This document shows, piece after piece, positions 39,001-56,669 of a DNA stretch of 64,000 nucleotides (the stretch's first letter is position 1; the number at the start of each line of letters is the position of its first letter). The notes beneath the pieces were generated by a model, which saw only the letters and a list, made by a program, of their open reading frames with translations, made no database searches and was not told the origin of the DNA. The position numbers and the translations under genes were made by a program. This DNA is from Mizuhopecten yessoensis. Taxonomy: Eukaryota. The stretch lies in the NCBI RefSeq assembly GCF_002113885.1, contig NW_018403513.1, forward strand, positions 706,883 to 770,882, read 5' to 3'.

Positions 39001-42000
39001 AAACAACAATTGAACATGTTCAACTTTTTGTTGAAATGTCAGAACCTTTTCTTTTCCACTATGTGTTCAAAAGTCACTTGTCTGTTGACTTGGAGGTATT
39101 TCACAGTTGTAGCATTTCATCAAAGATGTGGGATGTAACACTCCTTGTGAAGTTGTGCACATTTGATTTTTTTCTCCTGAATAATGTAACATTACGGGCC
39201 GAAGGTAGTCTGGCTGACTGAACCTGCCGTGACCCACGCGTCGTCGCTGGACAGTTTACACAGGCTAATTGTACTTAAATTGGCAATCTAACCGGATCCT
39301 TCCTCAATTCTTTTACAAAACCTTTCACCCCAATGACGTACAAGTTAACTTGTTATTCACATAACCCTAGTCCGCCCCGTGTTGTGCATTACGTCCGGTA
39401 CTTAGCAGATGTCACAAGAGACACAACACAAAGGATCAGGATTTAACCTTTTTACTGAGTAAAGGAACCTAATGTGTCACATTGCCGGCTTATATTGCAA
39501 TGCTATCATTTCAGAAACGTGACTTCTCAGATCTAAGGATCAGTCGTCTGCCGGTTCATGCACCTAGTAAAAACATTTTTTTCTATTTGTGCAGTATTTT
39601 TAGACAAGTTATCATAAAGAACTGTCAGTAGGGCAAATCAACTTTTAAAGTTCTGGTTTTGACCTGGTTAAGTTCACTTTTACAAAAACATGTGTATAAT
39701 AATGTACAAAAAATGGTATTTTTTAGTTGTAATTCTTCTTGTTTTCAAAAAGAAATAAAAATTTGCGAAAATTCAAGAGCGAATGCATATTCTAACTCAA
39801 ATCCCATATTCTGATGCTGATTCAGTAAAGTCAGTTGGATTGAAGGTGTGAAGATCTGTTGGATACAGATATTTAAAATGGTGGTCTGTTGTTTAGAGAA
39901 GATCTCTTCTTCCCTTGATAACTTGATAATGCACCATTGTCAAATAGTGAATTGATCAAAGTGGTATAGCTTTTAACTATATAGCGGATCCTCAAAATAA
40001 CAAGTAAGTAGCTAAAATATCTTAAATCTATGTTACATTTACAAACATATTTCATTTTAAAAGAATTGCGTCAACAACAAAACAAAAACGTAAACAGAAT
40101 TTACTTTCTCAATTTGGACCGAAACTTGAATTTTTAGCACCATATTGGAATTTGATAGTATTACATCACAGCTCCAGTGTCACCAGTGGGCAGGTGTGAC
40201 CACTTCTCCAGTGTCACCAGTGGGCAGGTGTCACCAAAGCTCCAGTGTCACCACAGCTCCAGTGTCACCAATCGGGCAGGTGTCACCACAGCTTCAGTGT
40301 CACCAATCGGGCAGGTGTCACCACAGCCCCAGTGTCACCAATCGGGCAGGTGTCACCTCAGCTCCAGTCTCACCATTGGGGTCGGTGTCACCACAGCTCC
40401 AGGGTCCCCAATCGGGCAGGTGTCACCACAGCTCCAGAGTCACCATTGAGCAGGTGTCACCACAGCTCCAGTGTCCCCATTGGGGTCGGTGTCACCACAG
40501 CTCCAGGGTCCCCAATCGGGCAGGTGTCACCACAGCTCCAGTGTCGCCAATCGGGCAGGTGTCACCACAGCTCCAGGGTCACCAATCGGGCAGGTGTCAC
40601 CACAGCGCCAGTGTCACCAATCGAGCAGGTGTCACCACAGCTCCAGTGTCACCGTTGGGCAGGTGCCACAACAGCTCCAGTGTCACCAATCGGGCAGGTC
40701 TCACCACAGCTCCAGTCTCACCATTGGGGCCGGTGTCACCACAGCTCCAGTGTCACCAATGGTCAGGTGTCACCACAGCTCCAGTGTCACCATTGAGGAA
40801 GGTGTCACCACAGCTCCAGTGTCCCCAATCAGGCAGGTGTCACCACAGCTCCAGTGACACCATTGGGGCCGGTGTCACCACAGCTCCAGTGTCACCAATT
40901 GGGCAGGTGTCACCACAGCTCCAGTGTTCCGTGGGCAGGTGTCACCAAAGCTCCAGTGTCACCACAGCTCCAGTGTCACCAATAGGGCAGGTGTCACCAC
41001 AGCTCCAGTGACACCATTGGGGAAGGTGTCACCACAGCTCCAGTGTCCCCAATTGTGCAGGTGTCACCACAGCTCCAGTGTCACCAGTGGTCGGGTGTCA
41101 CCACAGCTCCAGTGTCACCAATGGGGCAGGTGTCACCACAGCTCCAGTCTCACCAATGGGGCAGGTGTCACCACAGCTCCAGTCTCACAATTGGGGTCGG
41201 TGGCACCACAGCTCCAGTTTCCCCAATCGGGCAGGTGTCACCACAGCTCCAGGGTCACCAATCGGGCAGGTGTCACCACAGCTCCAGTCCCACCATTGGG
41301 GTCGGTGTCACCACAGCTCCAGTGTCACCAATGGTCAGGTGTCACCACAGCTCCAGTGTCACCACTTGGGGCGGTGTCACCACAGCTCCAGTGTCCCCAA
41401 TCAGGCAGGTGTCACCACAGCTCCAGTGTCACCAATCGGGCAGGTGTCACCACAGCTCCAGTCTCACCATTGGGGTCGGTGTCACCACAGCTCCAGTGTC
41501 CCCAATCGGGCAGGTGTCACCACAGCTCCAGCGTCACCATTGGGGAAGGTGTCACCACAGCTCCAGGGTCCCCAATCGGGCAGGTGTCACCACAGCTTCA
41601 GTGTCGCCAATCGGGCAGGTGTCACCACAGCTCCAGTGTCCCCAATTGGGCAGGTGTCACCACAGCTCCAGTGTTCCCAATCCGGCAGGTGTCACCACAG
41701 CTCCAGTGTCACCAATTGGGCAGGTGTCACTACAGCTCCTGTGTCCCCAATCGGGAAGGTGTCACCACAGCTCCAGTGTTCCCAATCCGGCAGGTGTCAC
41801 CACAGCTCCAGTGTCACCAATCGGGCAGGTGTCACTACAGCTCCGGTGTCCCCAATCGGGAAGGTGTCACCACAGCTCCAGTGTCACCAATTGGGCAGGT
41901 GTCACCACAGCCCCAGTGTCACCAATCGGGCAGGTGTCACCACAGCTTCAGTGTCACCAATCGGGCAGGTGTCACGACAGCTCCGGTGTCCCCAATCGGG

Positions 42001-45000
42001 AAGGGGTCACCACAGCTCCAGTGTCACCAACGGGCAGTTGTTTCATGTTAAATGTTTTTACCTTAAAGTACAAGGGAGTCATGACGCAGAACCATAAATG
42101 TACCATAAATAAAACAAAATATGCTTTTGTCTTTTACATCACAGCTCCAGTGTCACCAGTGGGCAGGTGTCACCACAGCTCCAGTGTTCCCAATCCGGCA
42201 GGTGTCACCACAGCTCCAGTGTCCCCAATCGGGCAGGTGTCACCACAGCTCCAGTGTCACCAACGGGCAGGTGTTTCATGTTAAATGTTTTTACCTTAAA
42301 GTACAAGGGAGTCATGACGCAGGACCATAAATGTACCATAAATAAAACAAAATATGCTTTTGTCTTTGGCCAACGTTAAATGTTTTGTGACAATGAAAGA
42401 GTTAAATAATTTCCAATTATAGCAGAAAAGGCAGAAACAGTTAGATTTGTTTCAATTATATTCCAAAGTGAAGATGGTGTTCGTCAGTTTTGAAAAATGT
42501 ATTATACAGAATTGCCAGTTGTCATTGCATAGAGCCACACTCGAAAGTCTGTTAATTCGATTGAAGATGGAAGTTATTAAAGAACAAGGAACTTCCTGCA
42601 TTTGTTTGTTATTCTGTTTCCTCAGCTTTTGTTCAAGTGATCAATAAAACCGCTACATGTACGGAGAAGATTTTGCATCATTATGACAACATGAAAGGAA
42701 GGGCTGACGGAGCTTCATTTATTGTTCCATCTAAATCAATATACATCGCGCCTCAGTTGTGGGATGGAGCTTTGAATAACCCTCATCAAAATCATACGTC
42801 AATCTATTCCTTCGTTTCTAGGAATAAATCTAAATAGAAAAAAATGTGATATTTTCTTTGAATCCAATTTTCACCATGTTGGCTAAAACCCAATTTCTTC
42901 AAAAGGGGTTTCAGAAATATTGTAATGCTGCAATTTAAATTTAGACAATCAGCTTGAACAAAGAACTATGCTTTAAAGTGCTACTTGTACTAAATGGCCC
43001 AGTAGATTTGGACTAAATTTGGTCTGGAGCATCCTTAGGCCATTAGGAGACTCAATTTTGTATAAACTGTGGATGTGGCCCCCTTGGGGGCAGAGGGGTG
43101 GGTCCCAATAGGGGAAATAGAGGTAAAACCTTTAAAATCCTTCTTCTACCATGGAGATTCAGGGATTTCATCCCAATTTGGTCTGGAGCATTGTTGGGTG
43201 ATCAAGGGGACTCAATGTTGTATAATTGGTGGGTGTGGACCCCCTAGGAGTAGAGTTGCCGGGCCAAATAGGGGAAATAAAGAGTTAAAACCTTTAAAAT
43301 CCTTCTTCTACTGTACCATTGGAGGGATTTTATGTAATAAGAATAATTTCCCATGGTTGCTTTATTATCCAGGTGAGCGATACAGGCCCTCTGGGCCTCT
43401 GGTTTACAGATATAAATGAATTCAGCTTTACAAGGAAAAGTGTGAAGGAAAGAGGTCACTGCTAGATTCAAAGTTGTAACTGTCAAAGTTTTGGGACATC
43501 AATCGTTTATGTGATTAATAGGAGAATGAATTCATAATAACAGAAACAACTGTAAAGGCCAAGAAAAAAAATGTGTGTTTCCGATTTCCTTACCAACCCT
43601 AGATTTTTGTGCCTTCCCTAAAGTTTTTATTGGCATTTAGTGATGAGCAATGTTAAAAGTCAGAAGTCCTGCTCTATATAAGCGTAGTAATAAAAATTAA
43701 AAAAATTGGCTACCTGCCGACCCCCAGTAGAAACAGGAAACACACATATTTCTTTTTTGGCCTTATATGGGTGGAAAAATCTATGTTTTGTAGAATTCTG
43801 GTTCTAAAATGCCAAAAGTATGCTGCATCCAGTCTGATTTTGGATTTAAGAGAATTCAGTTGTTTTCACTTTGAATTCTACAGATTTCTATAACCTTATC
43901 CCTCACAGGTCACACCTATTCCTGGGGCCTCAGTCGACCTGACCTTCTTACCCAGTGTTACCAGGGAACACATCCAGTCAATGGCTACCTGGGACCCCTC
44001 GACCCCAGCAAGAATGAGACATACCGTTTCCTCAAAAATCTCTTCAATGAGGTCCTCCATGTTTTCAAGGATGAGTACATTCATCTGGGAGGGGATGAAG
44101 TTCCCATGACCTGTTGGTAAGGAAAAACACCTATGAATCACTTAAATTTTCACGAGATGTTTTTTGTATGTTTATTACCAAAGAAAGTCAAACGTAAGTT
44201 CAAATATCTCACAAATATTGAGACGAAGTCAAACAAGAAAGATTTATTGAGATTTATTGGTCTTTTCATACCGGTAATTAACACAATCACCCCTGAAATT
44301 TGAGGATGGATTATTCCAACCTTTGAATTGGAAGAGTTCAATTGTGTCTTCAGGGATGAATGAGAAAAAATCCGTACAAATTAGTGGTTTATAGAACAAT
44401 TATATACATTTAAAATTAGTGGATTTTACATAAGTATGGTCATAATGACCGGAGAGAGATTTACCCAGCATATCCGGAGAGTAACAGAGCTGATATAGTC
44501 TTCATTTTCTAGGAAAGCTTTCTTGCAGACGTGAAAGCTTAGAACATGGCGTAATCATAATAAAATTTGTTATCGGAAAAACCAATCAAACATTTGCTTT
44601 CTATAAGATTCCTCGTAATCCAAATATGAAAAAAGAAAACTTGTTTACTGCAAGTTTTCAGAAAGCCAATCTGCCTGAGTTTAACAAAAACCTTAGAGTG
44701 AAGATATCCCAAAGTGACATATAAGATGGAACTCAAGTCAGTAGTAATGTAGCATGAAATAAAATTTGAAAGAACTTGTATAAATTTCTTTTCAATATCA
44801 GGTCATCTAACCCCGAAGTCCTTCAGCTACTCAACAAACTGGACGGTAAACCAGACGAACCAATCAACCTTCAGAATGTCGACCCCTACATGTACAGCTA
44901 CGACATTCGGAAAGTCCTCGAGTTCTACGAAAAACGGTATACAAATAATGACATACATGTCAGGAACACAAAGAGCATGAATTCTTATTAAATTCGTTCC

Positions 45001-48000
45001 TCGACACAGACAAGAGTACATTTTGCCAACAATTGATGTCTTGCCTTTTGTTGTTAGGATCCCATTGGTTAAATCTAATACCAAGATTTTGATGTATTTT
45101 GTAATGTGACATGATTTAAAAAATATGAAATCTCGGTACACTGCCATGATGAATGATTGTATTGTATATTATTGACATTCCGTCAACTATTCAACATGAT
45201 TGATATATTGTCTGTCTTGTATGTGATTTGTTTTAAAATAAAAAAACATTTTTTCCTAGACTGACACAAGATCTGAAGGAAATTGGTCGTCGAAGGAAGA
45301 ACGGAGTGCGATTTGTCATGTGGCAGGAGATTATGAATAACAATGTGCAGGTACATGTGATAAAAAAATTCATCTAAATTTTGTGTCGTTGGTCTTCCTG
45401 GTAAACTTGGGAGAGCTTGTGGCATTAACCACTTTTTATTCTTCTTTATCTTTGACTTTGAATTTGTTTCACACTTTTCTTAAAATCTACCTTCTAGATT
45501 TTAATTTTAAATCTACCTACTAGATTTTAATGAAGTTTTTATGACTGTTGATGAGCATGTGTAAATATGCATGTAACTTTTTCTCCTATCCAACATCCAA
45601 GATGGCTGTCATGGCCTTAGATTGACTGACACATTTAGGAGTTTTATACAGAGTTTTATAGGTCTATAACAAGCTACAAACCTCACCTTAAGTCTATAAC
45701 AAGCTACAGACCTCACCATAAGTCTATAACAAGCTACAGATCTCACCATAAGTCTATAACAAGCTACAGACCTCACCATATCTCTATAACAAGCCAGACC
45801 TCACCATATGGCTATAACTGATGATGATTTGTCTATAACAGTTGCCCAATGACACCATCATCCAGATTTGGCAGGGAGACATGGGAGATGTCCAGCGAGC
45901 CATAGACATGGGATATAACACCATATACTCCACCTGTTGGTACCTCGACCTCATCGAGTATGGCGTCAAGTGGCCCAAGTACTACAATTGTGACCCAGCT
46001 GACACAAGCATGGGTAAGTTTATATCGTTAACTGATTACTAAACTAAACAATAAGATATTCATTAAATGATTCATAATTTTGTAAAAAAACAACAACTGC
46101 AAGGACTCGTTTGAAAAATTTAGGTTTGAGAATCTCATTGGACATTGTCTTTTGCCTGGAATATGAAAATCTTCCAGAAAAACAGTATCTTAATTCATCC
46201 AGCATGTTTGGGGGAAAGGAAAGAACTTTTAGTTCACAGTGGTGCCTGTAAAAATAGTTAAATTTGCCCCCCTCCCTCCCGGCAGAATTAAGTAACATTC
46301 TTCAATGCACTGTAATTGTGGATGTTGAACATTGCATTATCTTGGCACTATCTTTTTCAGTTTCTCCCAATGGGGGTCATGACCCCCATTGGGAAATTCT
46401 GTGGGGGGTGATAACGCGAGAACGAAAATTTGTGTGGAAATTTAATAATTTCGCGGGGTCTCGGCTTTACGGCGTATTATGTTTTGTCTTCTGGCAAGAT
46501 CAATGACTTTTTTTGAAAATAACAAAACATTTTATCACACCTTCATTGTTTTATTACATATTCTTAATCAATATACATGTTCTTCTTTTCCTAGGTGCAT
46601 TCTGAAAGCATGAACCATGTTGATTTAGTTTTGCACATAACAAAGCACATATTGTATCATTTCTTAATTCAGATCTCCCTTCTGTCTGGATCTTCTTCAA
46701 CATGGAAAATGTTCTCTCAGAGTCAGCATTACTCACTGAAAGTACCAAACATGCCTTCATTAGCCTACACAACACACCAAACCTAAGATCATTCTCAAAG
46801 GGTTCTTTAACTGCATGCCTTTTGATATCGTACGTAGCACCCTAAGCTACCGAAAAATGATTGGTACACAGTTTACAATAGGCATGATCGGGTCCAATAT
46901 TACTCTTCTGAAGCCACTCATAATCTTATTCCCACGAAGCATTGTACTTACAGGCATACTTTTTCTTTTTTGACGATGAACACTAAAATAACGAACGTTT
47001 TCTCGGGTTAGAAGCCATTTGTGAAAGTGAAATGACAAGCGCTACGATCGGGATTATATGCATTGTAGTAACAGTGAACAGTACTCACCTTTTGAATTTG
47101 CCAGGCTGGTTCCGAAACAGGGACGCCATTGTGAAAACAAATCACTTAGTATACGGACTTTACCTATAACTGAAAGCTAAACTTCCGAGAGACACGAACG
47201 GAACATTTCCGGAGGTACAGAGATCCTAATAAAAGACGCGGATGCGGGTGATTGCGGGTCATATTTACGGAAAGCGGGAGATACGTATGACCTGCGCGGG
47301 TCATAAGATCGTCGCGGGTGATAGGTTCATTTTGCGGGTGTGACCCGCAGAATGCGGGTCATTTAGCAAGTATGTCTTGTGTACCTTTAAATGTTCATCA
47401 ATTCTTCTGTACCTTTCAAATGTGTCATCAGTTCTTGTGTACCTTTCAAATGTGTCATCAATTCTTTATACCTTTCAAATTTGTTATTAATTCTTGTTTA
47501 CGTTTCAAATATGCCATCAATTCTTACCTATCTCTCAAATGTATCAACGTTCAGTTTGTAGCCGAGGTCACTTAATCTGCCAAGTGAGTCCTCTAAGGGT
47601 TGAACCAAACAATAAATCAGGAAATCCATGGCCAGTGCTATTCATATTGAGCTGAAGGGAAGTTCCCTCTAGCCTAGTATTTAACAGATGACTAGACTTA
47701 TCATGGTGACAAATTAAACCGGTCTAGTTACCATTTATGAAAATATCTTCCAATTTTTTTAGTGTGAACCTCTTTTTGAAAGAAAAATATGTTGAAATAA
47801 GGTAGCATATACTGTAGATTTCACTTTATATCACTTTTCATTTGTCGGAGAAAAACATGAGTGTATACTTAAATGTCAGTCCAACAAATAAAAAAATTAG
47901 ATCCCTAAGCATTATACACCACTATGTCTAATACATTTTGTTGTGTTATGTCTTCTGGTTGGGTTGATGAATTGTCAGAATACTTGAAAAACACATTTCT

Positions 48001-51000
48001 TACTTAATCTGAAGGAATATTGATTTATGGGTTGACATTTTTATACACCATTATGTTTCCTTGTTGATGGATTTTATCTCATTCTTGAAGACATTTAAGT
48101 TATAAGGTCTTTAGCCTGTGCCATATGTTAACCTCAGGTGTCACACAGAAGGATAGAGATTTCCAGGTTATTTATTTGTCATAATAAGATAAGTGTAAAA
48201 TAATTGTCAATAGGATTTAAGAGGAAGTCGGTGAATTCCTGATGAACTATATGTGTGTACTATAAGTATTCATAATAATGAAGTAAAACATCTTTGTTGG
48301 GTTGAAACAGGAGGTAAACTATGGTGATTTATCCATGTTTCTTTTGCACTGGTGATCTTGTGTCTGTATGTGGTATACCTCAGGGCTAAATGATAAATGA
48401 TGTTAGCCATTTCTTCCTGTTAATGAGGAAATGCTACATGCTAATACATTTTACTGAAACCATGAGTGCATGTCATCAGAGTGAGACTATGACTCATCAT
48501 TTACATACATACAAAATTTATAAAGCTTTTAACAAATGTCAAGAAATTTAAATCAATTTTTAAAATTAATTTAATAAAAAAATATTTATGCAAGTTCAAT
48601 TTTTAGCTCACCCCGTCCGTCAACTTTTCCTTTAAAACGTTACTAGTCCTGAACGGCCCAGTAGATTTTGACTAAATTTTGTCTGGAGCATTCTTAGGCC
48701 AAGGGGACTCAATTTTGTATAAACGGTGGGTGTGGCCCGCCTGGGGGCAGAGAGGTGGGCCCAATAGGGGAAATAGAGGTAAAACCTTCAAAATCCTTCT
48801 TCTACCGTAGGGATTAAGGGATTTATCCTAATTTAGTCTTGAGCATCCTTGGGTCAAGGGGACTCAATTTTGTATAAATGGTGGGTCTGGCCTGCCTGGG
48901 GGCAGAGGGGCGGGGCCCAATACGGGAAATATAGCAAATTCTTTAAAATCCTTCTTCTTCTGTAGGAATGAATGGATTTGTTCCATATTTGGTCTAAAGC
49001 AACCTTGGGTGAAAGGGAACCAATTTTGTATAAACCGTGGGTCTGGCCCACTAGGGGCCTGAGGGGCGGGGCCCAATAGGGGGAAATATAGCAAATTCTT
49101 TAATATCCTTCTTCTTCTGTAGGAATGATAGGATTTGTTCCATATTTGGTCTAAAGCAACCTTGGGTGAAAGGGAACCAATTTTGTATAAACCGTGGGTC
49201 TGGCCCACTAGGGGCCTGAGGGGCGGGGCCCAATAGGGGGAAATATAGCAAATTCTTTAATATCCTTCTTCTTCTGTAGGAATGATAGGATTTGTTCCAT
49301 ATTTGGTCTAAAGCAACCTTGGGTGAAAGGGAACCAATTTTGTATAAACCGTGGGTCTGGCCCACTAGGGGCCTGAGGGGCGGGGCCCAATAGGGGGAAA
49401 TATAGCAAATTCTTTAATATCCTTCTTCTTCTGTAGGAATGATAGGATTTGTTCCATATTTGGTCTAAAGCATCCTTGGGTAAAGGGGAACCAATTTTGT
49501 ATAAACTGTGGGTCTGGCCCCCCAAAAGGGGCCTGAGGGGTGGGGCCCAATAGGGGAACATAGCAAATTATTCTTTAAAATCCTTCTTCTTCTGTAGGAA
49601 TGATAGGATTTGTTCCATATTTGGTCTAAAGCATCCTTGGGTAAAGGGGAACCAATTTTGTATAAACTGTGGGTCTGGCCCCCCAAAAGGGGCCTGAGGG
49701 GTGGGGCCCAATAGGGGAACATAGCAAATTATTCTTTAAAATCCTTCTTCTTCTGTAGGAATGATAGGATTTGTTCCATATTTGGTCTAAAGCATCCTTG
49801 GGTAAAGGGGAACCAATTTTGTATAAACTGTGGGTCTGGCCCCCCAAAAGGGGCCTGAGGGGTGGGGCCCAATAGGGGAACATAGCAAATTATTCTTTAA
49901 AATCCTTCTTCTTCTGTAGGAATGAAAAGATTTGGTCCATATTTGGTGTGGAGCATCCTTGGTTAAAAGGGGAACTAATTTTGTATAAACAGTGGGTGTG
50001 GCCCCCTTGGGACCTGAGGGGCGGGGCCCAATAGGGGAAATAGAATTAAAACCTTTGTAATCCTTCTTCATAGGGATTAAGGGATTTTCTCCTAATTTAG
50101 TCTGGAGCATCCTTGGGCATAAGGGACTCACTTTCGTATTGACAGCAAGGTTGGCCCCCCTGGGGGCAGAAGGGAGGGGCCCAATAGGGAAAACACAGCA
50201 AACTTTTCAAATACCTTCTTCTTCTGTACGAATGACAGGATTTTGTCCAAATTTGGTATGAAGCATCCTTGGGTTAAGGGGAACCAATTTTGTATAAACA
50301 GTGTGTCTAACCCCACTGGAGGCAGAGAGGCAGGGGCCAATAGGGGAAATAGAGGTAAAACCTTTAAAATCCTTCTTCTACCATTGGGATTATGGGATTT
50401 TATCCTTATTTACCGTCTGGAGCATCCTTTGGCCAAGGGGACTCAATTTTGTATAATTGGTGGGTATGACCTCCCTAGGGGCATAAGGGTGGGCTCTGTT
50501 TGAAGATTGTTCTTGCTATATCTCAAGTACTGAATGGATCTTCCTGAAATTCATATGTACTTACAGCACCTACCATGGAGTGTTATAGGTTTACTTCATA
50601 CCAGTTATTTTAAACATATTCAGGTGAGCAATACAGGCCCTTTGGGCCTCTTGTTCATGATTTCTTTTTTCAATTTCATTAAATTTAATTACACAATTCA
50701 ATCTTAATTGAATTATAAAAAAGCTTATTCAATGATACTATTTAGTTTGTTGAAATGTTGGGTTAGCCATATTTTATTAGGAATTGGTGTGTGTATAATT
50801 GCAGGATACCAGATTGATGAGAAGAAAGTTCTGGGCGGTGAGGCGTGCATGTGGGCAGAATATGTGGATAACGAAAACGTGATGACAACATTGTGGTAAG
50901 TTTACACGAGTTTTGCTTGGGTTTCCTAAAATGGATTAAGGAAAATTGGAATCAAAGGACGTTTTAACAATGGTCAGAAAATGTGAAACAAATTGACATT

Positions 51001-54000
51001 TTACATAGGCACTGGCAAGAAAAATGTGAAACAGATGTTAATAATTTTTACATTACTCAGAAAAATATGAAGCAAAAGGACTCCATATATATGTCAGAAA
51101 AAATGTGAAACAAAAGATTTGGTGACAGTTTTTGAAACAGGTAAGATTGCATTTCAGACGAAAATGCTGTTCATCCATTGGTGAAAAATGGTCAGGTACT
51201 GAACCACTTAAAAGCTATCAATGGATCAGTAAGGACATCTCATTATGATGTCTCAATTGACTAAAACAATTTTGCTGTCTAATAATTTTCTGGTTAAGCA
51301 ATATCATACTTTGACATGAGATTGATAAAAACATAAAGTTCAATTTACAATGAAGAAATTTCAAGAGTTGTTGATGTGGTGAAATGTTCATGTAGTTTGT
51401 CACAACAAGGTGAATAGTGTTAGTGATAACAATAGAACTAACGATAAACTATGTAACTAACGATAAGCTATGTAACTAACGATAAACTATGTAACTAATG
51501 ATAAACTATGTAACTAATGATAACTATGTAACAAATTATAAACTAAGTAACTAACGATAATCTATTTAACTAACGATAAACTATGTAACTAACGATAAAC
51601 AATGTAACAAATGATATACAATGTAACTAAAGATAAACTATGTAACTAACAATAAACAATGTAACAAATTATAAACTATGTAACTAACGATAAACTATGT
51701 AACAAATGATATACAATGTAGCTAAAGATAAACTACGTAACTAATGATAAACTATGTAACTAATGATAAACTAAGTAACTAATCATAAATTGCTAATGAT
51801 AAACTATGTAACTAATGATAAACAGCTAATGATAAACTATGTAACTAATGATAAACTATGTAACTAACAATAACCTATGTAACTAATGATAAACTATGTA
51901 ACTAATGATAAACTATGTAACTAATGATAACTATGTAACAAATTATAAACTAAGTAACTAACGATAATCTATGTAACTACGATAAACTATGTAACTAACG
52001 ATAAACAATGTAACAAATGATATACAATGTAACTAAAGATAAACTATGTAACTAACAATAAACAATGTAACAAATTATAAACTATGTAACTAACGATAAA
52101 CTATGTAACAAATGATATACAATGTAGCTAAAGATAAACTATGTAACTAATGATAAACTATGTAACTAATGATAAACTAAGTAACTTATCATAAATTGCT
52201 AATGATAAACTATGTAACTAATGATAAACAGCTAATGATAAACTATGTAACTAATGATAAACTATGTAACTAATGATAAACTAAGTAACTAATGATAAAT
52301 TGCTAATGATAAACTATGTAACTAATGATAAACGGCTAATGATAAACTATGTAACAAATGATAAACTGCTAATGATAAACTATGTAACAAATTATAAACT
52401 AAGTAACTAACGATAAACTATATAACTAATGATAAACTAAAAAACTAATGATAAACTGCTAATGATAAACTATGTAACAAATTATAAACTAAGTAACTAA
52501 CGATAAACTATGTAACTAATGATAAACTAAGTAACTAATGGTAAACTATGTAACTAATGATAAACTATGTAACTAATGATAAACGACTAATGAAAAACTA
52601 TGTAACTAATGATAAGCGTCTAATGATAAACTATGTAACAAATTATAAACTAAGTAACTAACGATAAACTATATAACTAATGATAAACTAAGAAACTAAT
52701 GATAAACTGTTAATGATAAACTATGTAACAAATTTTAAACTAAGTAACTAATGATGAACTATGTAACTAACGATAAACTATGTAACTAATGATAAACTGC
52801 TAATGATAAACTATGTAACAAATTATAAACTAAGTAACTAACGATAAACTATGTAACTAATGATAAACTAAGTAACTAATGATAAACTATGTAACTAATG
52901 ATAAGCGTCTAATGATAAACTATGTAACTAATGATAAACGGCTAATGTAACTAATGATAAACGGCTAATGATAAACTATGTAACTAATGATAAACGGTAA
53001 ATGATAAACTATGTAACTAATGATAAACGGCTAATGATAAACTATGTAACTAATGATAAACGGCTAATGATAAACTATGTAACTAATGATAAACGGTAAA
53101 TGATAAACTATGTAACTAATGATAAACGGTAAATGATAAACTATGTAACTAATGATAAACGGCTAATGATAAACTATGTAACTAATGATAAACGGCTAAT
53201 GATAAACTATGTAACTAATGATAAACGGTAAATGATAAACTATGTAACTAATGATAAACGGTAAATGATAAACTATGTAACTAATGATAAACGGCTAATG
53301 ATAAACTATGTAACTAATGATAAACGGCTAATGATAAACTATGTAACTAATGATAAACGGCTAATGATAAACTATGTAACTAATGATAAACGGCTAATGA
53401 TAAACTATGTAACTAATGATAAACGGCTAATGATAAACTATGTAACTAATGATAAACGGCTAATGATAAACTATGTAACTAATGATAAACGGTAAATGAT
53501 AAACTATGTAACTAATGATAAACGGCTAATGATAAACTATGTAACTAATGATAAACGGCTAATGATAAACTATGTTACTAAGTACAAGGGGAAATGAGAT
53601 CCAACGTCCGCTAGTGGATGTTCAGTGAAGTTCTGCGTTCCCCAGTTGATTGATTCCTAAATGGAATACACCAGTCCAGCAATAAGGGTAATAGAAATTC
53701 ACTAGTCCAGCAATAAGCTTGGGTAATAGAAATTCACCTGTCCAGCAATAAGGGTAATAGAAATTCACCAATCCAGCAATAAGGGTAATAGAAATTCACC
53801 AGTCCAGCAATAAGGGTAATAGAAGTTCAAAGAAGAGACGACCAGACAACATCAAGTGGGGAGTCTCTGCACATTTTTGTCCAGTTTACATGTTTCAGTC
53901 CACATCATGTAAACTGGATTAAATTTCCCGAGATTCCCCATTTGATGTTGTCTGGTCATCTCTTCTTTGAATATGTAACTAAAACTATGAACTTATGATA

Positions 54001-55987
54001 AACAATGTAACTAAATATAAACTATGTAATTAATGATACTGTAATTAATGACAAACAATGTAACTAATGATAATCAAGGTAGCTAATGATAAAAGAAAAA
54101 ATCTAAGTTTACTGATGTCAAAACTTTTGTATGCGTCAAGATTACATTTAGGATTCTACCAATGTTAAGAAATTGTGAAATATAATCTCACTAAATTTGT
54201 CCTGTCTGCTTTAAGTGTATAATAGATGGTGACCTATCTTGTGTTACAGGCCTCGGGCATCTGCTGTGGCCGAGAGACTGTGGAGTAGTAAAGACGTGAA
54301 GGATGTGGATGCTGCAGGTAAACGGCTGTCAGAACATCGCTGCCGTATGCTCAGGTATGACATCGTATACACTACAGTATACAGTTGTTGACTTGGAATG
54401 AGGGATACAGGTGCTTTGTTCGACCCTCAGTCAACCTGGTGCCATTGAAGTTAACAAAACATCCGTTCCTCAGAGATTTGTACTTGACAAAAATATTACA
54501 AATCTCTTATGCTCAGTGTCATAGAGAATTTAGATTTACTGGAATAGATTGTGGGAAATCAAGGTAAATGTAGGCTTATAGAAAGGTCACTCCCAAGTTC
54601 AGTAATCAGGCGGGATCAAGTATAACAAACCTTGTTGACCTCCTGTCATTTTGAGTGTTGTCATTTATTAAGAGAAATGTTAAGGAGGCACAGTTGTCTA
54701 GTGTTAGGACGCCGGGCTCGTGACCCAAGGGTTGCAGATTCAAGTCATGTTATAGCACTGTGTTGTATATTTGAACAAGATACTTAACTACGCTTGTTCC
54801 AGTCTACTCAGCTGTAAATGAGGTTGTGGTTTGGCAGTGCTGGAATTGTTGAATGTTAGCTGTGAGCACCGAAATGGTAGCACCGGCTGTATGCTCCCCA
54901 GGGAGTTGAGAAAGATGGTTGCAAAGGCCCAATAACCACAGATAATAGTTTGTGAACCGCTTTGAGACTACCTAAGACCTAGGTTATGATAAAGCAGTAT
55001 ATGAAAACCTCAAATGATTATTATTATTATTACCCCATTTTGCATGTGGTGCAACCTTTGCTGATTGTTTTTACTTGTGTCCGTCTAGTCGAGGCCTACC
55101 AGTGGGGATGATCAGTGGTCCAGACTACTGTCTCCGACGAGGACATCGCCGAGACAGAGACAACTCCTCCAACTGCTCCGTCGGTCACTGCTTCCAGAGC
55201 AAGGACACCGTCCAGATAGAAAAGATCAATGTCCGAGTCCAACAGAGGAGTCACAACCTGCCAGTTCCCGACTGTAACCAGGTAAGGCCAGCAACAAAAG
55301 ACAAAAAGAAAGGAAATTAAATTCAAATTTCAATTTCAGATATAATTCAGGTACTTTTGTTCCTATTATAGCTGTTACAGATTCCTAATTATAATATAAA
55401 CTTTATTTATTTTACAACAATTATAAAACAAGTAATTTCATCTTATATTAATCACTTCTTGTTGGCCCGGATGGTAGCATGCGGGGGTCTTATTGTGGGA
55501 GGAAACTGGAATACCCGGAGAAAACCTACTTCGTAGGGCAGTTGACCCATACCTTTTTATGTCCAATCGGGTAATCAAACTCCAACCGCCTTGGTGAAAA
55601 GGAATTGCACCACCCGACCACCCTGATTACTGAAATATTAATTGTCACTTAGATCTCATTTGATATAAATATGATTATAGTTTTAAGTCTTCGTATATAT
55701 GACATCATTATATTTTCCCATTTCAGATAATTTCCCAAGGAGGAAACATGATTACCATAGCAGTAGTGATAGCTTTGTTCATTGTTGTCATTGTCAGCAT
55801 CAAAGCCACAGGAAACAGAATGATGCAGGGACGGTTTTGTCGAAATAAGAACATCTTCATCGCATTCATTGTTGTCATTCTCATATATTTTATGTGTTCA
55901 ACATCACTTTGGATGCAGGTCCTGGAATTCAAGGGTTCTTTTGAAAAACGTGTGAAATCGTCCTACTCCGACAAGGGTTCAATATAG
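2982..55987 (+). CDS. HEXB: Beta-hexosaminidase (GH20, HEXB/HEXA-like), 14 coding exons, ~1062 aa, with long N-terminal stem and C-terminal double transmembrane extension. join(2982..3087,6737..8131,8426..8538,11219..11329,28086..28187,33560..33665,43909..44116,44802..44936,45260..45350,45842..46013,50805..50895,54250..54354,55089..55281,55727..55987)
   Basis: Manual splicing gives a stop-free frame with GT-AG at all 13 introns and matching phases. GH20 motifs occur in order: [82 protein letters not shown] (catalytic DE), [44 protein letters not shown]. The symbol is family-level; orthology to vertebrate HEXB vs HEXA is not established. Confidence 0.9.
6737..8131 (+). CDS. HEXB: Exon 2: low-complexity stem plus N-terminal GH20b domain (EPWPMPQ...PHDKMDES)
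   Basis: Lies in the 494-aa ORF 6700..8184; acceptor ctttaccag|TG (phase 1); donor T|gtaagt at 8131/8132. Confidence 0.88.
8426..8538 (+). CDS. HEXB: Exon 3 ([38 protein letters not shown])
   Basis: ttttcag acceptor, gtatgt donor, conserved [13 protein letters not shown]. Confidence 0.95.
10900..11104. repeat. 28-bp tandem repeat (taaatatgtaaaggaaatgtagcaatat), ~7 copies
   Basis: Direct reading. Confidence 0.9.
11219..11329 (+). CDS. HEXB: Exon 4 ([37 protein letters not shown])
   Basis: ttttgcag / gtaagt; start of the GH20 catalytic domain; 111 nt. Confidence 0.95.
13925..15135. repeat. Degenerate ~21-bp minisatellite (ggagataatgtcaatataaat) arranged forward/inverted/forward
   Basis: The block at ~14360..14828 is the reverse complement of the flanking blocks. 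Confidence 0.85.
16743..16853. mobile_element. ~110-bp hairpin MITE
   Basis: ctgggtccacttgtataaacatctcaa ... ttgagatgttttatacaagtgggcccag. Confidence 0.7.
20788..20878 (+). mobile_element. MITE family A copy
   Basis: Perfect TTAA-CTCATTCACCCCTGA TIRs. Confidence 0.8.
21403..21899 (-). mobile_element. Non-autonomous AcademH-like DNA transposon (~100-bp TIRs, 9-bp TSD, RecQ-like helicase remnant)
   Basis: TIRs 21403..~21502 / ~21800..21899; TSD attagatgt at 21394..21402 and 21900..21908; minus-strand 21724..21596 reads [42 protein letters not shown]. Confidence 0.8.
22140..22230 (+). mobile_element. MITE family A copy
   Basis: Same TIRs and interior; TTAA at both ends. Confidence 0.8.
24172..24400 (+). 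mobile_element. tRNA-derived SINE with V-type central domain
   Basis: A-box-like tagcgcagtgg, B-box-like gttcaattccc, core gggttttctcaggtactccaatttcctcccaca; related inverted copy at 55460..55625. Confidence 0.7.
25197..27562. repeat. ~30-bp minisatellite (ccattctaaccatatcagttgatatatcac), ~75 copies with 33-bp variants
   Basis: Direct reading; produces the [10 protein letters not shown] pseudo-ORFs. Confidence 0.95.
27563..27925. mobile_element. GC/CpG-rich truncated DNA-transposon end (PIF/Harbinger-like)
   Basis: Begins taa-agccctgtcacacct, with internal short repeats and a sharp GC shift; second TIR not found. Confidence 0.45.
27925..28105 (+). repeat. Three tandem copies of the intron 4 3' end plus first bases of exon 5
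   Basis: agtaatataatatatgtattttgatgttttcagGAGG x3 (AG ending 27965, 28019, 28085). Confidence 0.92.
28086..28187 (+). CDS. HEXB: Exon 5 ([34 protein letters not shown])
   Basis: ttttcag / gtacgt; HWH-DDQSFP motif; 102 nt. Confidence 0.95.
28292..29651 (-). mobile_element. Tc1/mariner transposon, decayed
   Basis: TIRs tactaatcacattttgctaaggatc / gatccatagcaaaatgtcagtagta, TA-flanked; transposase remnants inside. Confidence 0.9.
28534..29383 (-). pseudogene. Tc1-family (DD34E) transposase pseudogene
   Basis: HTH-like [46 protein letters not shown]-terminal [18 protein letters not shown]; frameshifts and deletions. Confidence 0.88.
31423..32790. repeat. 37-bp minisatellite (gtttacctatgtagctctgggtctgtcattctgtaat), ~37 copies
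   Basis: Direct reading. Confidence 0.95.
33560..33665 (+). CDS. HEXB: Exon 6 ([35 protein letters not shown])
   Basis: tttttcag / gtgagt; RGIR..PEFDTPG motif. Confidence 0.95.
35085..35192. repeat. 17-bp tandem repeat (caggtattatatctaga), ~6 copies
   Basis: Direct reading. Confidence 0.85.
36289..36734. mobile_element. TA-flanked MITE (Tc1/mariner-type)
   Basis: tactgtattgcggttt..tttgcgggg / ctcccgcgatatgtaaccgctatacagta imperfect TIRs. Confidence 0.65.
37780..38185. repeat. 59-bp tandem repeat (caatgtttgaaagacacaggggcattacaactcatggtctgacaaggtaagggtaaact), ~7 copies, decaying to ~38550
   Basis: Direct reading. Confidence 0.9.
40161..42367. repeat. 35-bp GC-rich minisatellite (caggtgtcaccacagctccagtgtcaccaatcggg), ~55 copies, with duplicated right flank
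   Basis: Direct reading; the unique flank 42040..42135 is repeated at 42274..42367. Confidence 0.95.
42985..43405 (+). mobile_element. Helentron/HINE-type element, 5'-truncated copy
   Basis: Same ~160-bp internal repeat as 48601..50655; 3' end caggtgagcgatacaggccctctgggcctctggttt. Confidence 0.75.
43909..44116 (+). CDS. HEXB: Exon 7 (GHTYSWG...[13 protein letters not shown]), contains the catalytic Asp-Glu pair
   Basis: ccctcacag / gtaagg; HLGGDE motif. Confidence 0.95.
44278..44364 (+). mobile_element. MITE family A copy (degenerate)
   Basis: Same interior (ttccaacctttgaattggaagagttca..tgtgtcttcaggg). Confidence 0.7.
44802..44936 (+). CDS. HEXB: Exon 8 ([46 protein letters not shown])
   Basis: atatcag / gtatac; W-x-SNP and L-E-F-Y landmarks; phase 2-2. 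Confidence 0.88.
45260..45350 (+). CDS. HEXB: Exon 9 ([30 protein letters not shown])
   Basis: ttttcctag / gtacat; WQE motif. Confidence 0.9.
45661..45841. repeat. 30-bp tandem repeat (gtctataacaagctacagacctcaccataa) abutting the exon 10 acceptor
   Basis: Direct reading, ~5 copies. Confidence 0.88.
45842..46013 (+). CDS. HEXB: Exon 10 ([11 protein letters not shown]...[28 protein letters not shown])
   Basis: taacag / gtaagt; DTIIQIW and WYLD motifs. Confidence 0.93.
46360..47373 (-). mobile_element. Internally deleted hAT transposon (zinc-finger and dimerisation-domain remnants)
   Basis: Minus strand [51 protein letters not shown] (~46812..46975) then [38 protein letters not shown] (~46640..46760); terminus gcaagtatg at 47373 with gcggg subterminal repeats; left boundary approximate. 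Confidence 0.8.
47374..47548. repeat. ~30-bp degenerate tandem repeat (tcttgtgtacctttcaaatgtgtcatcaat)
   Basis: Direct reading. Confidence 0.8.
48601..50655 (+). mobile_element. Helentron-associated (HINE/DINE-1-like) element carrying ~11 internal 157-161-bp tandem repeats
   Basis: 5' ttttagctcacc subTIR, ccgtccgtc microsatellite, central array, 3' caggtgagc subTIR plus ggccc-ttt-gggcc hairpin, T-rich site. Confidence 0.85.
50805..50895 (+). CDS. HEXB: Exon 11 ([30 protein letters not shown])
   Basis: ttgcag / gtaagt; GGEACMWxEYVD motif; 91 nt. Confidence 0.95.
51436..54092. repeat. 19-bp minisatellite (taactaatgataaactatg) turning into a 33-bp composite unit, interrupted at ~53582..53971
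   Basis: Direct reading; the 33-bp unit gives the [11 protein letters not shown] pseudo-ORF. Confidence 0.95.
53826..53971. mobile_element. Near-palindromic hairpin element, preceded by a 31-bp tandem repeat (53669..53825)
   Basis: ttcaaagaagagacgaccagacaacatcaagtgggg ... ccccatttgatgttgtctggtcatctcttctttgaa, plus inner ccagtttacatg/catgtaaactgg. Confidence 0.75.
54250..54354 (+). CDS. HEXB: Exon 12 ([35 protein letters not shown])
   Basis: gttacag / gtatga; [12 protein letters not shown]; 105 nt. Confidence 0.95.
54684..55032 (+). mobile_element. tRNA-derived CORE-type SINE with (TTA)n tail
   Basis: tRNA-like head (cagttgtctagtgttagg...gattcaagtc), core ttgaacaagatacttaac...ctcagctgtaaatgagg, tail attattattattatta. 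Confidence 0.65.
55089..55281 (+). CDS. HEXB: Exon 13 ([15 protein letters not shown] plus non-canonical extension [20 protein letters not shown]...PDCNQ)
   Basis: gtctag acceptor; RG...GPDYC is the usual Hex C-terminus; the frame stays open to a strong CAG|gtaagg donor. Confidence 0.85.
55460..55625 (-). mobile_element. V-type SINE copy in intron 13
   Basis: tgtgggaggaaactggaatacccggagaaaacc is the reverse complement of the SINE core; ccttggtgaaa is shared with the 24172 copy. Confidence 0.65.
55727..55987 (+). CDS. HEXB: Terminal exon 14 encoding two predicted transmembrane helices and a short tail
   Basis: Acceptor ttttcccatttcag, phase 0, in frame with ORF 55748..55987; hydrophobic runs [17 protein letters not shown] and [20 protein letters not shown]; TAG stop. 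Confidence 0.78.
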   Translation: MISQGGNMITIAVVIALFIVVIVSIKATGNRMMQGRFCRNKNIFIAFIVVILIYFMCSTSLWMQVLEFKGSFEKRVKSSYSDKGSI

Positions 55988-56669
55988 TGCTGTGTTATTG
56001 TTTTCATTTTTGATGGCTGACTAAAATAGACCGCAAAAATAATTAAAGGACGATATTTGTGCAGACATTGTTCAATGTTATCTCCGAGTTAATGAACTGC
56101 GTATTTTCACTTCTGAAATGGCCTAGTCATATTTAATTTTATCAGGACTTTATTTGTGATTCAGAAGTAAAGCTTGTTCTAGAAAAGTCATTGGAAAAAG
56201 ACTTGTTTTCAGAAAATGGGCAAATAAAGAGTTTTTTCTGCATGATGTATCATATAATTTTTAATTTAAAAATTGTATAGTGAAGGTCACACATGTATCA
56301 TGATCTATATATCCCTAGAGCTATTTTCCAATAGAAACTGAAAATGGTTGATTCATTAATAAACACCAGCACCCTGTTGGTGAAGTTTAAACTACTGTTT
56401 TAAGAATATCCTCAGTCAAAATTGATTGACCCAGTAAGCATTTTAAGGTCACAAATCAATGTCGTGATCAGCTGGCATGGAATCATGTTGGTAATATTTC
56501 CATAATAGTCAAGGTCAAACGTCACTTACCTATATACTTAAGAAAAGTTGTATGTACATATGTGTATTCCATAGATAGGTACTGACCCAGAGTCTATAAT
56601 TAGGCCTGAGAATACAGCTTAATCTTTATGACAAGACAATACATGTGCAAACCTGTATTAAGAGACCAT

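What the first reader, a model, noticed from the sequence alone, without database searches (positions are those of the whole stretch)
55089..55987. Hexosaminidase with a C-terminal double-transmembrane anchor added by an extra exon
Seen: after GPDYC, near where HEXA/HEXB-type subunits end, the frame continues ~50 aa and splices (CAG|gtaagg ... tttcag|ATA, phase 0) to an exon encoding [17 protein letters not shown] - [17 protein letters not shown] - [20 protein letters not shown] and a ~24-aa tail. Known: lysosomal HEXA/HEXB subunits are soluble, and the membrane-bound animal GH20 enzymes I know (e.g. insect fused lobes) use an N-terminal type II anchor. Inference: with an N-terminal signal peptide the catalytic domain is lumenal/extracellular and the K/R-rich loop is cytosolic (positive-inside rule). 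The result is a hairpin-anchored hexosaminidase. The short (~17-20 aa) helices are compatible with Golgi residence, so it could be an N-glycan-trimming or cell-surface/chitin-remodelling enzyme rather than a lysosomal one. I cannot confirm novelty without a search.
Basis: partly seen in the sequence, partly recalled or inferred. Interest (0 to 1): 0.9.

Follow-up and report, generated by a model that had tools for sequence, protein, structure and literature searches.

The report
Scallop hexosaminidase with C-terminal membrane hairpin
The last two exons of this scallop gene do add a conserved linker and two membrane-spanning helices to a HEXB-like sugar-trimming enzyme; molluscs from scallops to abalone share this build, it is already in the databases as an "uncharacterized protein", and its function has not been studied.

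Summary
Observation confirmed. The window is Mizuhopecten yessoensis gene LOC110447083.

- **Gene structure.** Exon 13 (55089-55281) ends the HEXB-like GH20 domain at GPDYC and adds a basic linker with three cysteines. A canonical phase-0 intron (CAG|GTAAGG ... TTTCAG|ATA) leads to exon 14 (55727-55987). Exon 14 encodes two strongly hydrophobic helices, a 17-aa loop (+5, no acidic residue) and a 24-aa tail.
- **Conservation.** Exon 14 is single-copy in this genome. It sits at the C-terminus of GH20 orthologues in at least 11 named bivalves and gastropods. Four intron-free oyster contigs carry the whole ORF, hairpin included.
- **Selection.** Between scallop and Pecten, dN/dS is 0.05 for both exons, while the intron is unalignable.
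- **Pattern within the hairpin.** Helix 1 keeps only its hydrophobicity. Helix 2 and the tail keep their sequence.

Best reading: a membrane-tethered, lumenal or extracellular HEXB-type hexosaminidase. Its location (Golgi, cell surface or lysosome) and substrate are untested. I found no paper describing this build. It is a new variant of a known kind, of moderate interest.

The parts
2982..55987 (+). Whole coding span of LOC110447083: 14 coding exons, 1062 aa. Signal-type N-terminus, about 350-aa N/Q-rich region, GH20b2, GH20 catalytic domain, linker, two-helix hairpin.
   Evidence: tblastn of P0026 (RefSeq XP_021348205.1) on the window gives 14 blocks at 93.9-100% identity, the lower values at block ends that run past exon borders. 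Pfam PF14845 at residues 395-530 and PF00728 at 552-890.
2982..3086 (+). Exon 1: N-terminal hydrophobic segment [22 protein letters not shown] (signal-peptide type).
   Evidence: KD 1.9. All full-length orthologues start with a similar short hydrophobic segment.
54251..54354 (+). Exon 12: [34 protein letters not shown], the end of the GH20 fold. Donor is AG|GTATGA, splitting the Ser codon.
   Evidence: Aligns to human HEXB.
55089..55281 (+). Exon 13. 55090-55131 encodes [14 protein letters not shown], the normal HEXB-type C-terminal end. 55132-55281 encodes a 50-aa basic linker with three cysteines invariant in 12 orthologues and NSS/NCS sequons.
   Evidence: (invariant C45, C50, C78 of alignment A1). 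dN/dS 0.05 against Pecten. Single copy in the genome.
55282..55726 (+). Intron 13: 445 nt, GTAAGG...TTTCAG, phase 0. Read-through would add [12 protein letters not shown] and stop at 55318-55320.
   Evidence: Not alignable to the Pecten intron apart from 19 nt at the acceptor.
55727..55987 (+). Exon 14: the terminal coding exon, 86 codons plus stop at 55985-55987.
   Evidence: single copy; conserved; 25 synonymous against 7 non-synonymous differences, dN/dS 0.05.
55751..55801 (+). Helix 1 (residues 985-1001, [17 protein letters not shown]). Only the hydrophobicity is conserved.
   Evidence: KD 2.9. 18% bivalve-gastropod identity. AF2 helix at tail-model residues 85-111, pLDDT about 49-77 in 10-residue blocks.
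55802..55852 (+). Loop (residues 1002-1018, [17 protein letters not shown]). +5 with no acidic residue, so predicted cytosolic. Contains an invariant Cys and Asn.
   Evidence: charges. (invariant C118 and N120 of A1).
55853..55912 (+). Helix 2 (residues 1019-1038, [20 protein letters not shown]). The sequence is conserved (motif YFMC-T--W).
   Evidence: KD 2.6. 57% bivalve-gastropod identity. Invariant I, F, Y, C, T, W. AF2 helix with pLDDT about 72.
55913..55984 (+). C-terminal tail (residues 1039-1062, [24 protein letters not shown]). Predicted to lie on the same side as the catalytic domain.
   Evidence: 85% identity among bivalve orders and 43% to gastropods. +5/-3 charge.
55988..56228 (+). 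Probable 3' UTR, with ATTAAA at 56042 and AATAAA at 56223.
   Evidence: 77% identity over 87 nt to the Pecten 3' flank. Transcriptome-sized runs hold 41-54% of the 31-mers of 55089-56250.

Best explanation
Exons 13 and 14 are the genuine, constitutive 3' coding end of a mollusc-specific paralogue of the HEXA/HEXB-type (GH20 subfamily 2) beta-N-acetylhexosaminidase.

Proposed topology:
1. A signal-type N-terminus sends the chain into the ER. The N/Q-rich region, the GH20b and GH20 domains and the Cys-rich linker are therefore lumenal or extracellular.
2. Helix 1 crosses the membrane outwards to inwards.
3. The short K/R-rich loop, with its invariant Cys, stays in the cytosol.
4. Helix 2 crosses back, and the conserved 24-aa tail ends on the catalytic side.

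The enzyme would thus be an intact exo-hexosaminidase (DD, HLGGDE and GGEA-W-EY motifs present, HEXB-like 'DL' pocket) held at a membrane by a C-terminal helical hairpin, not released as a soluble lysosomal protein.

Helix 1 looks like a generic anchor. Helix 2 and the tail are under sequence-specific constraint, so they probably also mediate packing, oligomerisation, sorting or partner binding.

Shown here: the gene structure, the conservation, purifying selection, the hydrophobicity and charge pattern, the intact catalytic motifs, and mRNA-level joining in oysters.

Inferred: signal cleavage, the in/out topology, membrane residence, and the site of action. My best guess for the site is the late secretory pathway or the cell surface, trimming terminal GlcNAc/GalNAc on glycoproteins or chitin oligomers next to the membrane.
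For: - **Sequence and splice sites:**
- **Same model in RefSeq:** the P0026 C-terminus is identical to the window, and its 14 exons map onto the window.
- **Domains:** Pfam GH20b2 plus GH20.
- **Closest structures:** human HEXB at 436 bits and HEXA at 414 bits, against about 200 bits for the insect OfHex1-type structure. The alignment stops at residue 919.
- **Catalytic motifs** are conserved in the HEXB alignment.
- **Exon 14 homologues** sit only at the C-terminus of roughly 1000-aa GH20 proteins of Pecten, Argopecten, Mizuhopecten, Magallana/Crassostrea, Saccostrea, Pinctada, Tegillarca, Haliotis (two species), Gigantopelta and Pomacea, or occur as lone exon ORFs. An unnamed caenogastropod contig has the same exon order.
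- **mRNA-level joining:** four Logan contigs of 3.5-5.2 kb (SRR5451712, SRR5451721, SRR5830801, SRR5830810) carry an uninterrupted 987-codon ORF that includes the hairpin. A 3428-bp contig carries a 1017-aa orthologue.
- **Selection:** dN/dS is 0.05 for exon 14 and 0.05 for the exon 13 extension against Pecten, with splice sites at the same codons and the intron unalignable.
- **Copy number:** both exons are single-copy in the 988-Mb genome.
- **Hydropathy and charges:**
- **Segment-wise conservation:**
- **AF2:** predicts two helices.
- **Transcription of exon 14 here:** 14 transcriptome-sized runs from 8 studies hold 41-54% of the stretch's 31-mers. That is about what the exons plus UTR without the intron would give (0.44-0.58 by my count). 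DNA-like runs hold 84-91%.
Against: - The run kinds are guesses by the tool.
- No dedicated signal-peptide or TM predictor was available. The topology rests on hydropathy, the positive-inside rule and lumenal-type features (cysteines, sequons).
- The AF2 models are of low confidence: mean pLDDT 50, pTM 0.22-0.43.
- RefSeq lists an oyster isoform of 855 aa that ends before GPDYC and lacks the hairpin, so a soluble form may coexist.
- A basic cluster (LRRGHRRD) directly after the globular domain could allow proteolytic release.
- Nothing here bears on localisation or substrate.
Confidence: 0.78

Rival explanations
1. Sub-case of function: the hairpin retains the enzyme in the Golgi. There it removes the GnT-I-added GlcNAc to make paucimannosidic N-glycans. 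It would be a mollusc counterpart of insect FDL and nematode HEX-2/-3 that reached membrane tethering by a different route.
For: - Short helices of 17-20 residues.
- Molluscs make paucimannosidic N-glycans, and a trimming beta-N-acetylglucosaminidase is assumed but unidentified (PMC11065688).
- The known N-glycan-processing hexosaminidases are membrane-bound and non-orthologous between phyla (PMC4339880; PMC11308363; title of Gutternigg et al. 2007 cited).
Against: - Golgi glycosidases are normally type II proteins. A roughly 350-aa N/Q-rich N-terminal region and a C-terminal hairpin are unusual for them.
- The catalytic core is much nearer to HEXB than to the one insect subfamily-2 enzyme in the PDB.
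- Orthology to FDL was not tested, and no FDL sequence was on hand.
- The genome holds many other GH20 loci that could do this job.
Confidence: 0.22
2. Sub-case of function: a cell-surface ecto-hexosaminidase, for example on mantle or larval shell-field epithelium or on gametes. It would trim chitin oligomers or matrix glycans, with the N/Q-rich polybasic region binding matrix.
For: - Beta-hexosaminidase-domain proteins belong to the bivalve biomineralisation toolbox and rise during larval shell formation (PMC8382897; PMC6662379).
- The long low-complexity N-terminal region would project away from the membrane.
- The exoplasmic tail is conserved.
Against: - The helices are short for plasma-membrane proteins.
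- The papers do not identify this gene.
- No expression data for this locus were obtained.
Confidence: 0.3
3. Sub-case of function: a catabolic endo-lysosomal enzyme. It is made as a membrane-bound precursor, sorted by the hairpin, and then cut at the basic cluster after GPDYC (and at KVRR|AP upstream) to release an ordinary soluble HEXB-like enzyme.
For: - HEXB-like core and 'DL' pocket.
- A basic cluster follows GPDYC in all 12 aligned orthologues (LRRG-RR in bivalves, more divergent in gastropods), and K-x-RR-AP precedes GH20b in the full-length ones.
- A hairpin-less isoform is predicted in oyster.
Against: - The sites are not canonical R-x-K/R-R furin sites.
- Strong sequence constraint on helix 2 and the tail is more than a disposable sorting tag needs.
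- No tyrosine- or dileucine-type lysosomal motif is visible in the 17-aa loop.
Confidence: 0.22
4. Artefact: exon 14 belongs to another small membrane-protein gene, or is UTR or pseudo-exon wrongly fused to the hexosaminidase by gene predictors.
For: - No junction reads were seen in this species.
- Several database hits are lone exon ORFs.
Against: - Uninterrupted cDNA-type contigs in oysters join GH20 to the hairpin.
- The same phase-0 junction occurs in 11 species.
- The exon has no upstream in-frame start: the lone ORFs begin in intron-like sequence just before the acceptor.
- dN/dS is 0.05.
Confidence: 0.03

Closest known systems
Human lysosomal beta-hexosaminidase subunits HEXB / HEXA (GH20 subfamily 2; PDB 1NOU, 2GJX)
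   Same: - GH20b plus GH20 architecture.
- 436 and 414 bits to the PDB chains.
- The DD, HLGGDE and GGEA-W-EY motifs are kept, as is the C-terminal Cys pair (HRC...GPDYC).
- 'DL' at the position that separates beta from alpha subunits. The last point rests on my own knowledge of Lemieux et al. 2006, read on the alignment.
   Different: - The human subunits end a few residues after the last Cys and are soluble.
- The scallop protein adds 143 residues (linker, two helices, tail) and about 350 N-terminal low-complexity residues.
Insect fused lobes (FDL) and nematode HEX-2/-3 N-glycan-processing hexosaminidases
   Same: They are membrane-bound GH20 enzymes with a lumenal catalytic domain. FDL is in the same GH20 subfamily 2 (PMC11308363; PMC4339880).
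   Different: - They are anchored by an N-terminal cytoplasmic-TM-stem arrangement (type II), with no C-terminal hairpin.
- HEX-2/-3 belong to subfamily 1.
- Orthology and substrate specificity were not tested here.
Bifidobacterium bifidum extracellular GH20 enzymes with a C-terminal transmembrane region
   Same: GH20 enzymes held on a membrane by the C-terminus (papers listed, e.g. PMC10245121).
   Different: They are bacterial, multi-domain and have a single C-terminal anchor. There is no relation to the mollusc hairpin exon, since no such hits appeared.
RefSeq / GenBank predicted proteins XP_021348205.1, OWF56498.1, XP_033755247.1, XP_034339203.1 and others
   Same: The same protein or its orthologues, with the same terminal exon.
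   Different: They are labelled 'uncharacterized protein' or 'Beta-hexosaminidase subunit beta'. I found no description of the hairpin or of any function in the searchable literature.

Membership tests
GH20 subfamily 2 (HEXA/HEXB/HEX-1/FDL type) beta-N-acetylhexosaminidase | GH20b2 N-domain followed by the GH20 (beta/alpha)8 catalytic domain | tested here: met
   PF14845 at 7e-19 (residues 395-530) and PF00728 at 4.5e-89 (residues 552-890). Individual exons also hit PF00728.
GH20 subfamily 2 (HEXA/HEXB/HEX-1/FDL type) beta-N-acetylhexosaminidase | Catalytic Asp-Glu pair in H-x-G-G-D-E, plus the substrate-assisting DD and GGE motifs | tested here: met
   [20 protein letters not shown] and [10 protein letters not shown] align with the same motifs of HEXB.
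GH20 subfamily 2 (HEXA/HEXB/HEX-1/FDL type) beta-N-acetylhexosaminidase | Hexosaminidase activity | not testable with these tools
   Needs an enzyme assay (4MU-GlcNAc/GalNAc, N-glycans, chito-oligomers).
Soluble lysosomal HEXA/HEXB-type subunit | The chain ends shortly after the last disulfide Cys and has no membrane segment | tested here: not met
   143 residues follow the HEXB-alignable part. They include two segments with KD 2.9 and 2.6, conserved in 12 orthologues.
FDL-type / type II Golgi N-glycan-processing hexosaminidase | N-terminal cytoplasmic tail, signal-anchor and stem | tested here: not met
   The N-terminus is a short hydrophobic segment at residues 1-22 with no cytoplasmic tail, which is signal-peptide type. 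The anchor is C-terminal.
FDL-type / type II Golgi N-glycan-processing hexosaminidase | Orthology to insect FDL and specificity for the alpha1,3-arm GlcNAc | not tested
GPI-anchored protein | A single C-terminal hydrophobic signal at the very end, with no hydrophilic tail | tested here: not met
   There are two hydrophobic segments separated by a basic loop and followed by a conserved 24-aa hydrophilic tail.
Bitopic helical-hairpin membrane anchor (N-out, loop-in, C-out) | Two TM-length hydrophobic helices with a short positively charged connecting loop | tested here: met
   Segments of 17-20 residues, a 17-aa loop with 5 K/R and no D/E. AF2 gives two helices.
Bitopic helical-hairpin membrane anchor (N-out, loop-in, C-out) | Experimental membrane integration and topology | not testable with these tools
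   Needs carbonate extraction, protease protection or glycosylation scanning.

The most novel reading that the evidence does not exclude
The hairpin is not just an anchor. It is a conserved module, more than 500 million years old if it dates to the bivalve-gastropod ancestor, whose second helix and exoplasmic tail dock the enzyme to a membrane partner or sorting machinery. That would make this the missing membrane-bound N-glycan-trimming (paucimannose-forming) or chitin-remodelling hexosaminidase of molluscs. It would also be an independent solution, alongside those of insects (FDL), nematodes (HEX-2/-3) and plants (HEXO), to keeping a hexosaminidase at a membrane, possibly switchable to a soluble form by splicing or cleavage.
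Probability: 0.2. Interest if true: 0.7.

Novelty: new variant of a known kind. Interest (0 to 1): 0.45.

Why it matters
Animal HEXA/HEXB-type hexosaminidases are textbook soluble lysosomal enzymes. The known membrane-bound animal GH20 enzymes (FDL, HEX-2/-3) use N-terminal anchors. A C-terminal two-helix anchor on a HEXB-like core, conserved across bivalves and gastropods, is a distinct architecture. It points to a non-lysosomal or membrane-proximal job in a phylum where GH20 is expanded, where paucimannosidic N-glycans exist without an identified trimming enzyme, and where hexosaminidase domains recur in shell-formation gene sets. It gives glycobiologists a concrete candidate to clone and assay. 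It does not open a long-standing question by itself, and the sequence is already public.

Tried and rejected
No junction counts exist for this species. Those places were sent to no search afterwards. They were masked or skipped in scripts.
- **Pfam on the two exons alone:** nothing for exon 13. Exon 14 gave only sub-threshold hits to assorted membrane DUFs, so it is no known domain.
- **Search with the cut-out tail P0001:925-1073:** one short hit only, P0024, an oyster contig in which exon 13 is flanked by intron-like sequence. It is uninformative about splicing.
- **AF2:** the 676-residue ectodomain plus tail and the 166-residue tail, each with a 12-sequence alignment, both gave low confidence (pLDDT 50). 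I used them only for helix positions and ran no fold search.
- **Repeat or transposon origin of exon 14:** rejected, because it is single-copy in the genome.
- **GPI signal:** rejected (two segments plus a hydrophilic tail).
- **Literature:** searches for the locus or accession names and for a C-terminal TM on animal GH20 found nothing relevant.
- **Joined model:** I never typed or joined the spliced model. The identical database protein P0026 was used by its id instead.

Full report
**What is in the sequence**

- Frame 55090 gives [14 protein letters not shown], followed by [50 protein letters not shown].
- The next bases are GTAAGG. At 55706-55726 there is a pyrimidine tract ending in TTTCAG.
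- 55727-55987 then reads IISQGGNM / [17 protein letters not shown] / [17 protein letters not shown] / [20 protein letters not shown] / [24 protein letters not shown] / stop.
- The junction is phase 0.
- If the donor were ignored, the frame would add 12 codons ([12 protein letters not shown]) and stop at 55318.
- Polyadenylation-type hexamers lie at 56042 and 56223.

**Which gene it is**

- The window lies in a 987,588,634-bp assembly of 82,659 contigs.
- A search of 1.84 billion representative proteins with exon 14 alone gave 19 hits.
- Follow-up searches returned P0026, RefSeq XP_021348205.1, 'uncharacterized protein LOC110447083 [Mizuhopecten yessoensis]', 1062 aa.
- Its C-terminus is letter for letter that of the window. 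tblastn places its 1062 residues on the window as 14 exons between 2982 and 55987.
- GenBank OWF56498.1 ('Beta-hexosaminidase subunit beta', 1066 aa) differs only in the last few residues.
- I used this database protein by its id, and searched window exons by reference.

**The enzyme part**

- Pfam finds Glycohydro_20b2 (residues 395-530) and Glyco_hydro_20 (residues 552-890, E 4.5e-89). Single exons also hit PF00728.
- Against the PDB, the best matches are human HEXB (436 bits) and HEXA (414 bits). The insect OfHex1-type enzyme scores about 200 bits.
- The HEXB alignment keeps [19 protein letters not shown] and GGEAC-W-EY, and stops at residue 919 of 1062.
- At the position where HEXB has Asp-Leu and HEXA has Asn-Arg, the scallop protein has WYLDL, which is beta-like. 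The assignment of those residues is from my own knowledge of the HexA structure paper.
- In the nomenclature of PMC11308363, this is GH20 subfamily 2.
- The genome holds many other GH20 loci (41 exon-level matches on 13 contigs). This agrees with the reported GH20 expansion in molluscs (PMC7560691). Only this locus has the hairpin exon.

**Is the extra end real?**

Four independent lines say yes.

1. **Conservation.**
   - Exon 14 matches the C-terminal 75-85 residues of GH20 proteins of 987-1077 aa. These come from Pecten maximus, Argopecten irradians, Magallana/Crassostrea, Saccostrea cucullata, Tegillarca granosa, Haliotis rubra, H. rufescens and Gigantopelta aegis.
   - It also matches partial models from Pinctada imbricata and Pomacea canaliculata.
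   - An unnamed caenogastropod contig shows the same exon order of GH20 exons, linker exon and hairpin exon.
   - The other hits are lone ORFs that start in intron-like sequence just before the acceptor. They are the same exon in unannotated contigs.
2. **mRNA-level joining.** Four Logan contigs of 3.5-5.2 kb carry an uninterrupted 2964-nt ORF for the 987-aa oyster orthologue, hairpin included. A 3428-bp contig encodes a 1017-aa orthologue of another bivalve. Genes of this family span about 45-53 kb with 13 introns, so these contigs must derive from spliced RNA.
3. **Selection.** In the Pecten maximus genomic locus, the donor and acceptor sit at the same codons.
   - Exon 14 differs by 25 synonymous and 7 non-synonymous changes, giving dN/dS 0.05.
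   - The 50-codon extension in exon 13 also gives 0.05, and the catalytic exons give 0.01.
   - The intron is unalignable apart from 19 nt at the acceptor.
4. **Copy number.** Both exons are single-copy in the genome, so the exon is not a repeat.

The indirect evidence is as follows.

- Fourteen transcriptome-sized runs from eight studies hold 41-54% of the 31-mers of 55089-56250. Four large DNA-like runs hold 84-91%.
- By my count, exon 14 plus UTR alone would give 0.44. Both exons plus UTR, without the intron, would give 0.58.
- This fits transcription of exon 14 with the intron removed, but the run kinds are the tool's guesses.

**Anatomy of the extension**

Alignment A1 of 12 orthologues and the segment statistics show a graded pattern.

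| Segment | Bivalve-gastropod identity | Identity among bivalve orders | Notes |
|---|---|---|---|
| Linker | 30% | 57% | Keeps a basic cluster right after GPDYC (LRRG-RR in bivalves, more divergent in gastropods) and three invariant cysteines. Most bivalves have an N-C-S/T sequon. These are features of a lumenal or extracellular segment. |
| Helix 1 | 18% | 34% | Only the hydrophobicity is kept, like a generic anchor. |
| Loop | 36% | 54% | Keeps an invariant Cys-(R/K)-Asn and its positive charge. |
| Helix 2 | 57% | 66% | Invariant I, F, Y, C, T, W (YFMC-T--W). |
| Tail | 43% | 85% | Consensus [15 protein letters not shown]. |

- Hydropathy means over 19 residues are 2.9 and 2.6 in the scallop. 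In eight orthologues they are 2.2-3.0 and 2.15-2.6, and the seven full-length ones also start with an N-terminal signal-type segment of 1.6-2.0.
- The loop has five K/R and no acidic residue. The tail has five K/R and three D/E.
- AF2 with these shallow alignments is of low confidence (mean pLDDT 50). It does place helices at residues 981-1007 and 1017-1056, with pLDDT of about 49-77 in the membrane parts.

**How it most likely works**

- With a signal-type N-terminus, the catalytic domain and linker are lumenal or extracellular.
- By the positive-inside rule the loop is cytosolic, so the chain goes out-in-out and the conserved tail returns to the catalytic side.
- The invariant juxtamembrane Cys in the loop is a plausible acylation site. 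This is inference only.
- HEXB-type enzymes act as dimers, and the partner-contributed Tyr (DLIEYG) is kept. A dimer would therefore bring four helices together, and the sequence constraint on helix 2 and the tail may reflect that packing or a partner protein. This is also inference.
- I commit to the reading 'membrane-tethered, catalytically competent HEXB-type exo-hexosaminidase' with confidence 0.78.

Where it acts is open. I rate the options as follows.

- **Cell surface or matrix: about 0.30.** Hexosaminidase domains recur in shell-formation sets (PMC8382897, PMC6662379).
- **Golgi N-glycan trimming: about 0.22.** Molluscs have paucimannosidic glycans and no identified trimming enzyme (PMC11065688).
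- **Endo-lysosomal precursor that is later released: about 0.22.**
- **Mis-annotation: about 0.03.**

RefSeq oyster isoforms hint at regulation. One uses an internal donor that removes 22 linker residues but keeps the hairpin. Another, of 855 aa, ends before GPDYC and lacks the hairpin.

**Comparison with what is known, and novelty**

- The protein is a member of GH20 subfamily 2 by every sequence criterion tested.
- It fails the 'soluble lysosomal subunit' criterion and the 'type II N-terminal anchor' criterion of FDL and HEX-2/-3.
- It is not GPI-like.
- Bacterial GH20 enzymes with a single C-terminal TM exist but are unrelated.
- Four literature searches, including the locus and accession names, found no description of this architecture. 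The library lacks most subscription journals, so this is not proof of absence.
- The sequence and the gene model are already public.
- I therefore class the finding as a new variant of a known kind with moderate interest (0.45). It is a solid, conserved and unexplained feature that is directly testable, but it is not a surprise that overturns anything.

Noticed in passing
window 6736-8130 (exon 2); P0026 residues 36-390: About 350 aa of N/Q-rich low-complexity sequence with polybasic runs ([16 protein letters not shown]). It ends in a conserved block, [24 protein letters not shown]|AP, just before GH20b. The K-x-R-R-AP site is conserved from scallop to abalone and could be a convertase site.
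   Followed up: partly
oyster orthologues P0047 (965 aa) and P0050 (855 aa): RefSeq predicts one oyster isoform that skips 22 linker residues through an internal donor but keeps the hairpin. It predicts another that ends at ...SRGLTVV, before GPDYC, and lacks the hairpin. A soluble form may therefore coexist with the anchored one.
   Followed up: no
window 55979-55987 versus P0031 (OWF56498.1): The GenBank model of the same gene ends ...SYSDKGDHFNIP (1066 aa), while RefSeq and the window's open frame end ...SYSDKGSI. Pecten and Argopecten end at ...DKG. The extreme C-terminus is variable or modelled differently.
   Followed up: no
window 25198-27562, 31422-32789, 40245-42041, 48701-50489, 51436-53581: The introns of this gene carry large tandem arrays: 30 bp x 76, 37 bp x 37, a GC-rich 35 bp x about 52 (local GC 57%), 157 bp x 11 and 19 bp x 121.
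   Followed up: no
window 28668-28982 (-) and 46557-46841 (-): There are transposase remnants inside introns: a DDE_3 (Tc1/mariner-type) fragment at E 1.3e-6 and a hAT C-terminal dimerisation domain at E 2.3e-9.
   Followed up: partly
L004 = G000:C4580:1958251-1961376 (- strand): A paralogous HEXB-like gene has its own roughly 58-aa extension after GPEYC (VRKKTSRTVQ...VSMK) in the open frame, with no hydrophobic segment. C-terminal extensions may be common among scallop GH20 paralogues.
   Followed up: no
window 62060-62383: The only run of N in the window (324 bases, an assembly gap). It was left as is.
   Followed up: no
The flanking intron sequence looks like a short interspersed element. 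The stretch was not examined further and was sent to no search.
   Followed up: no
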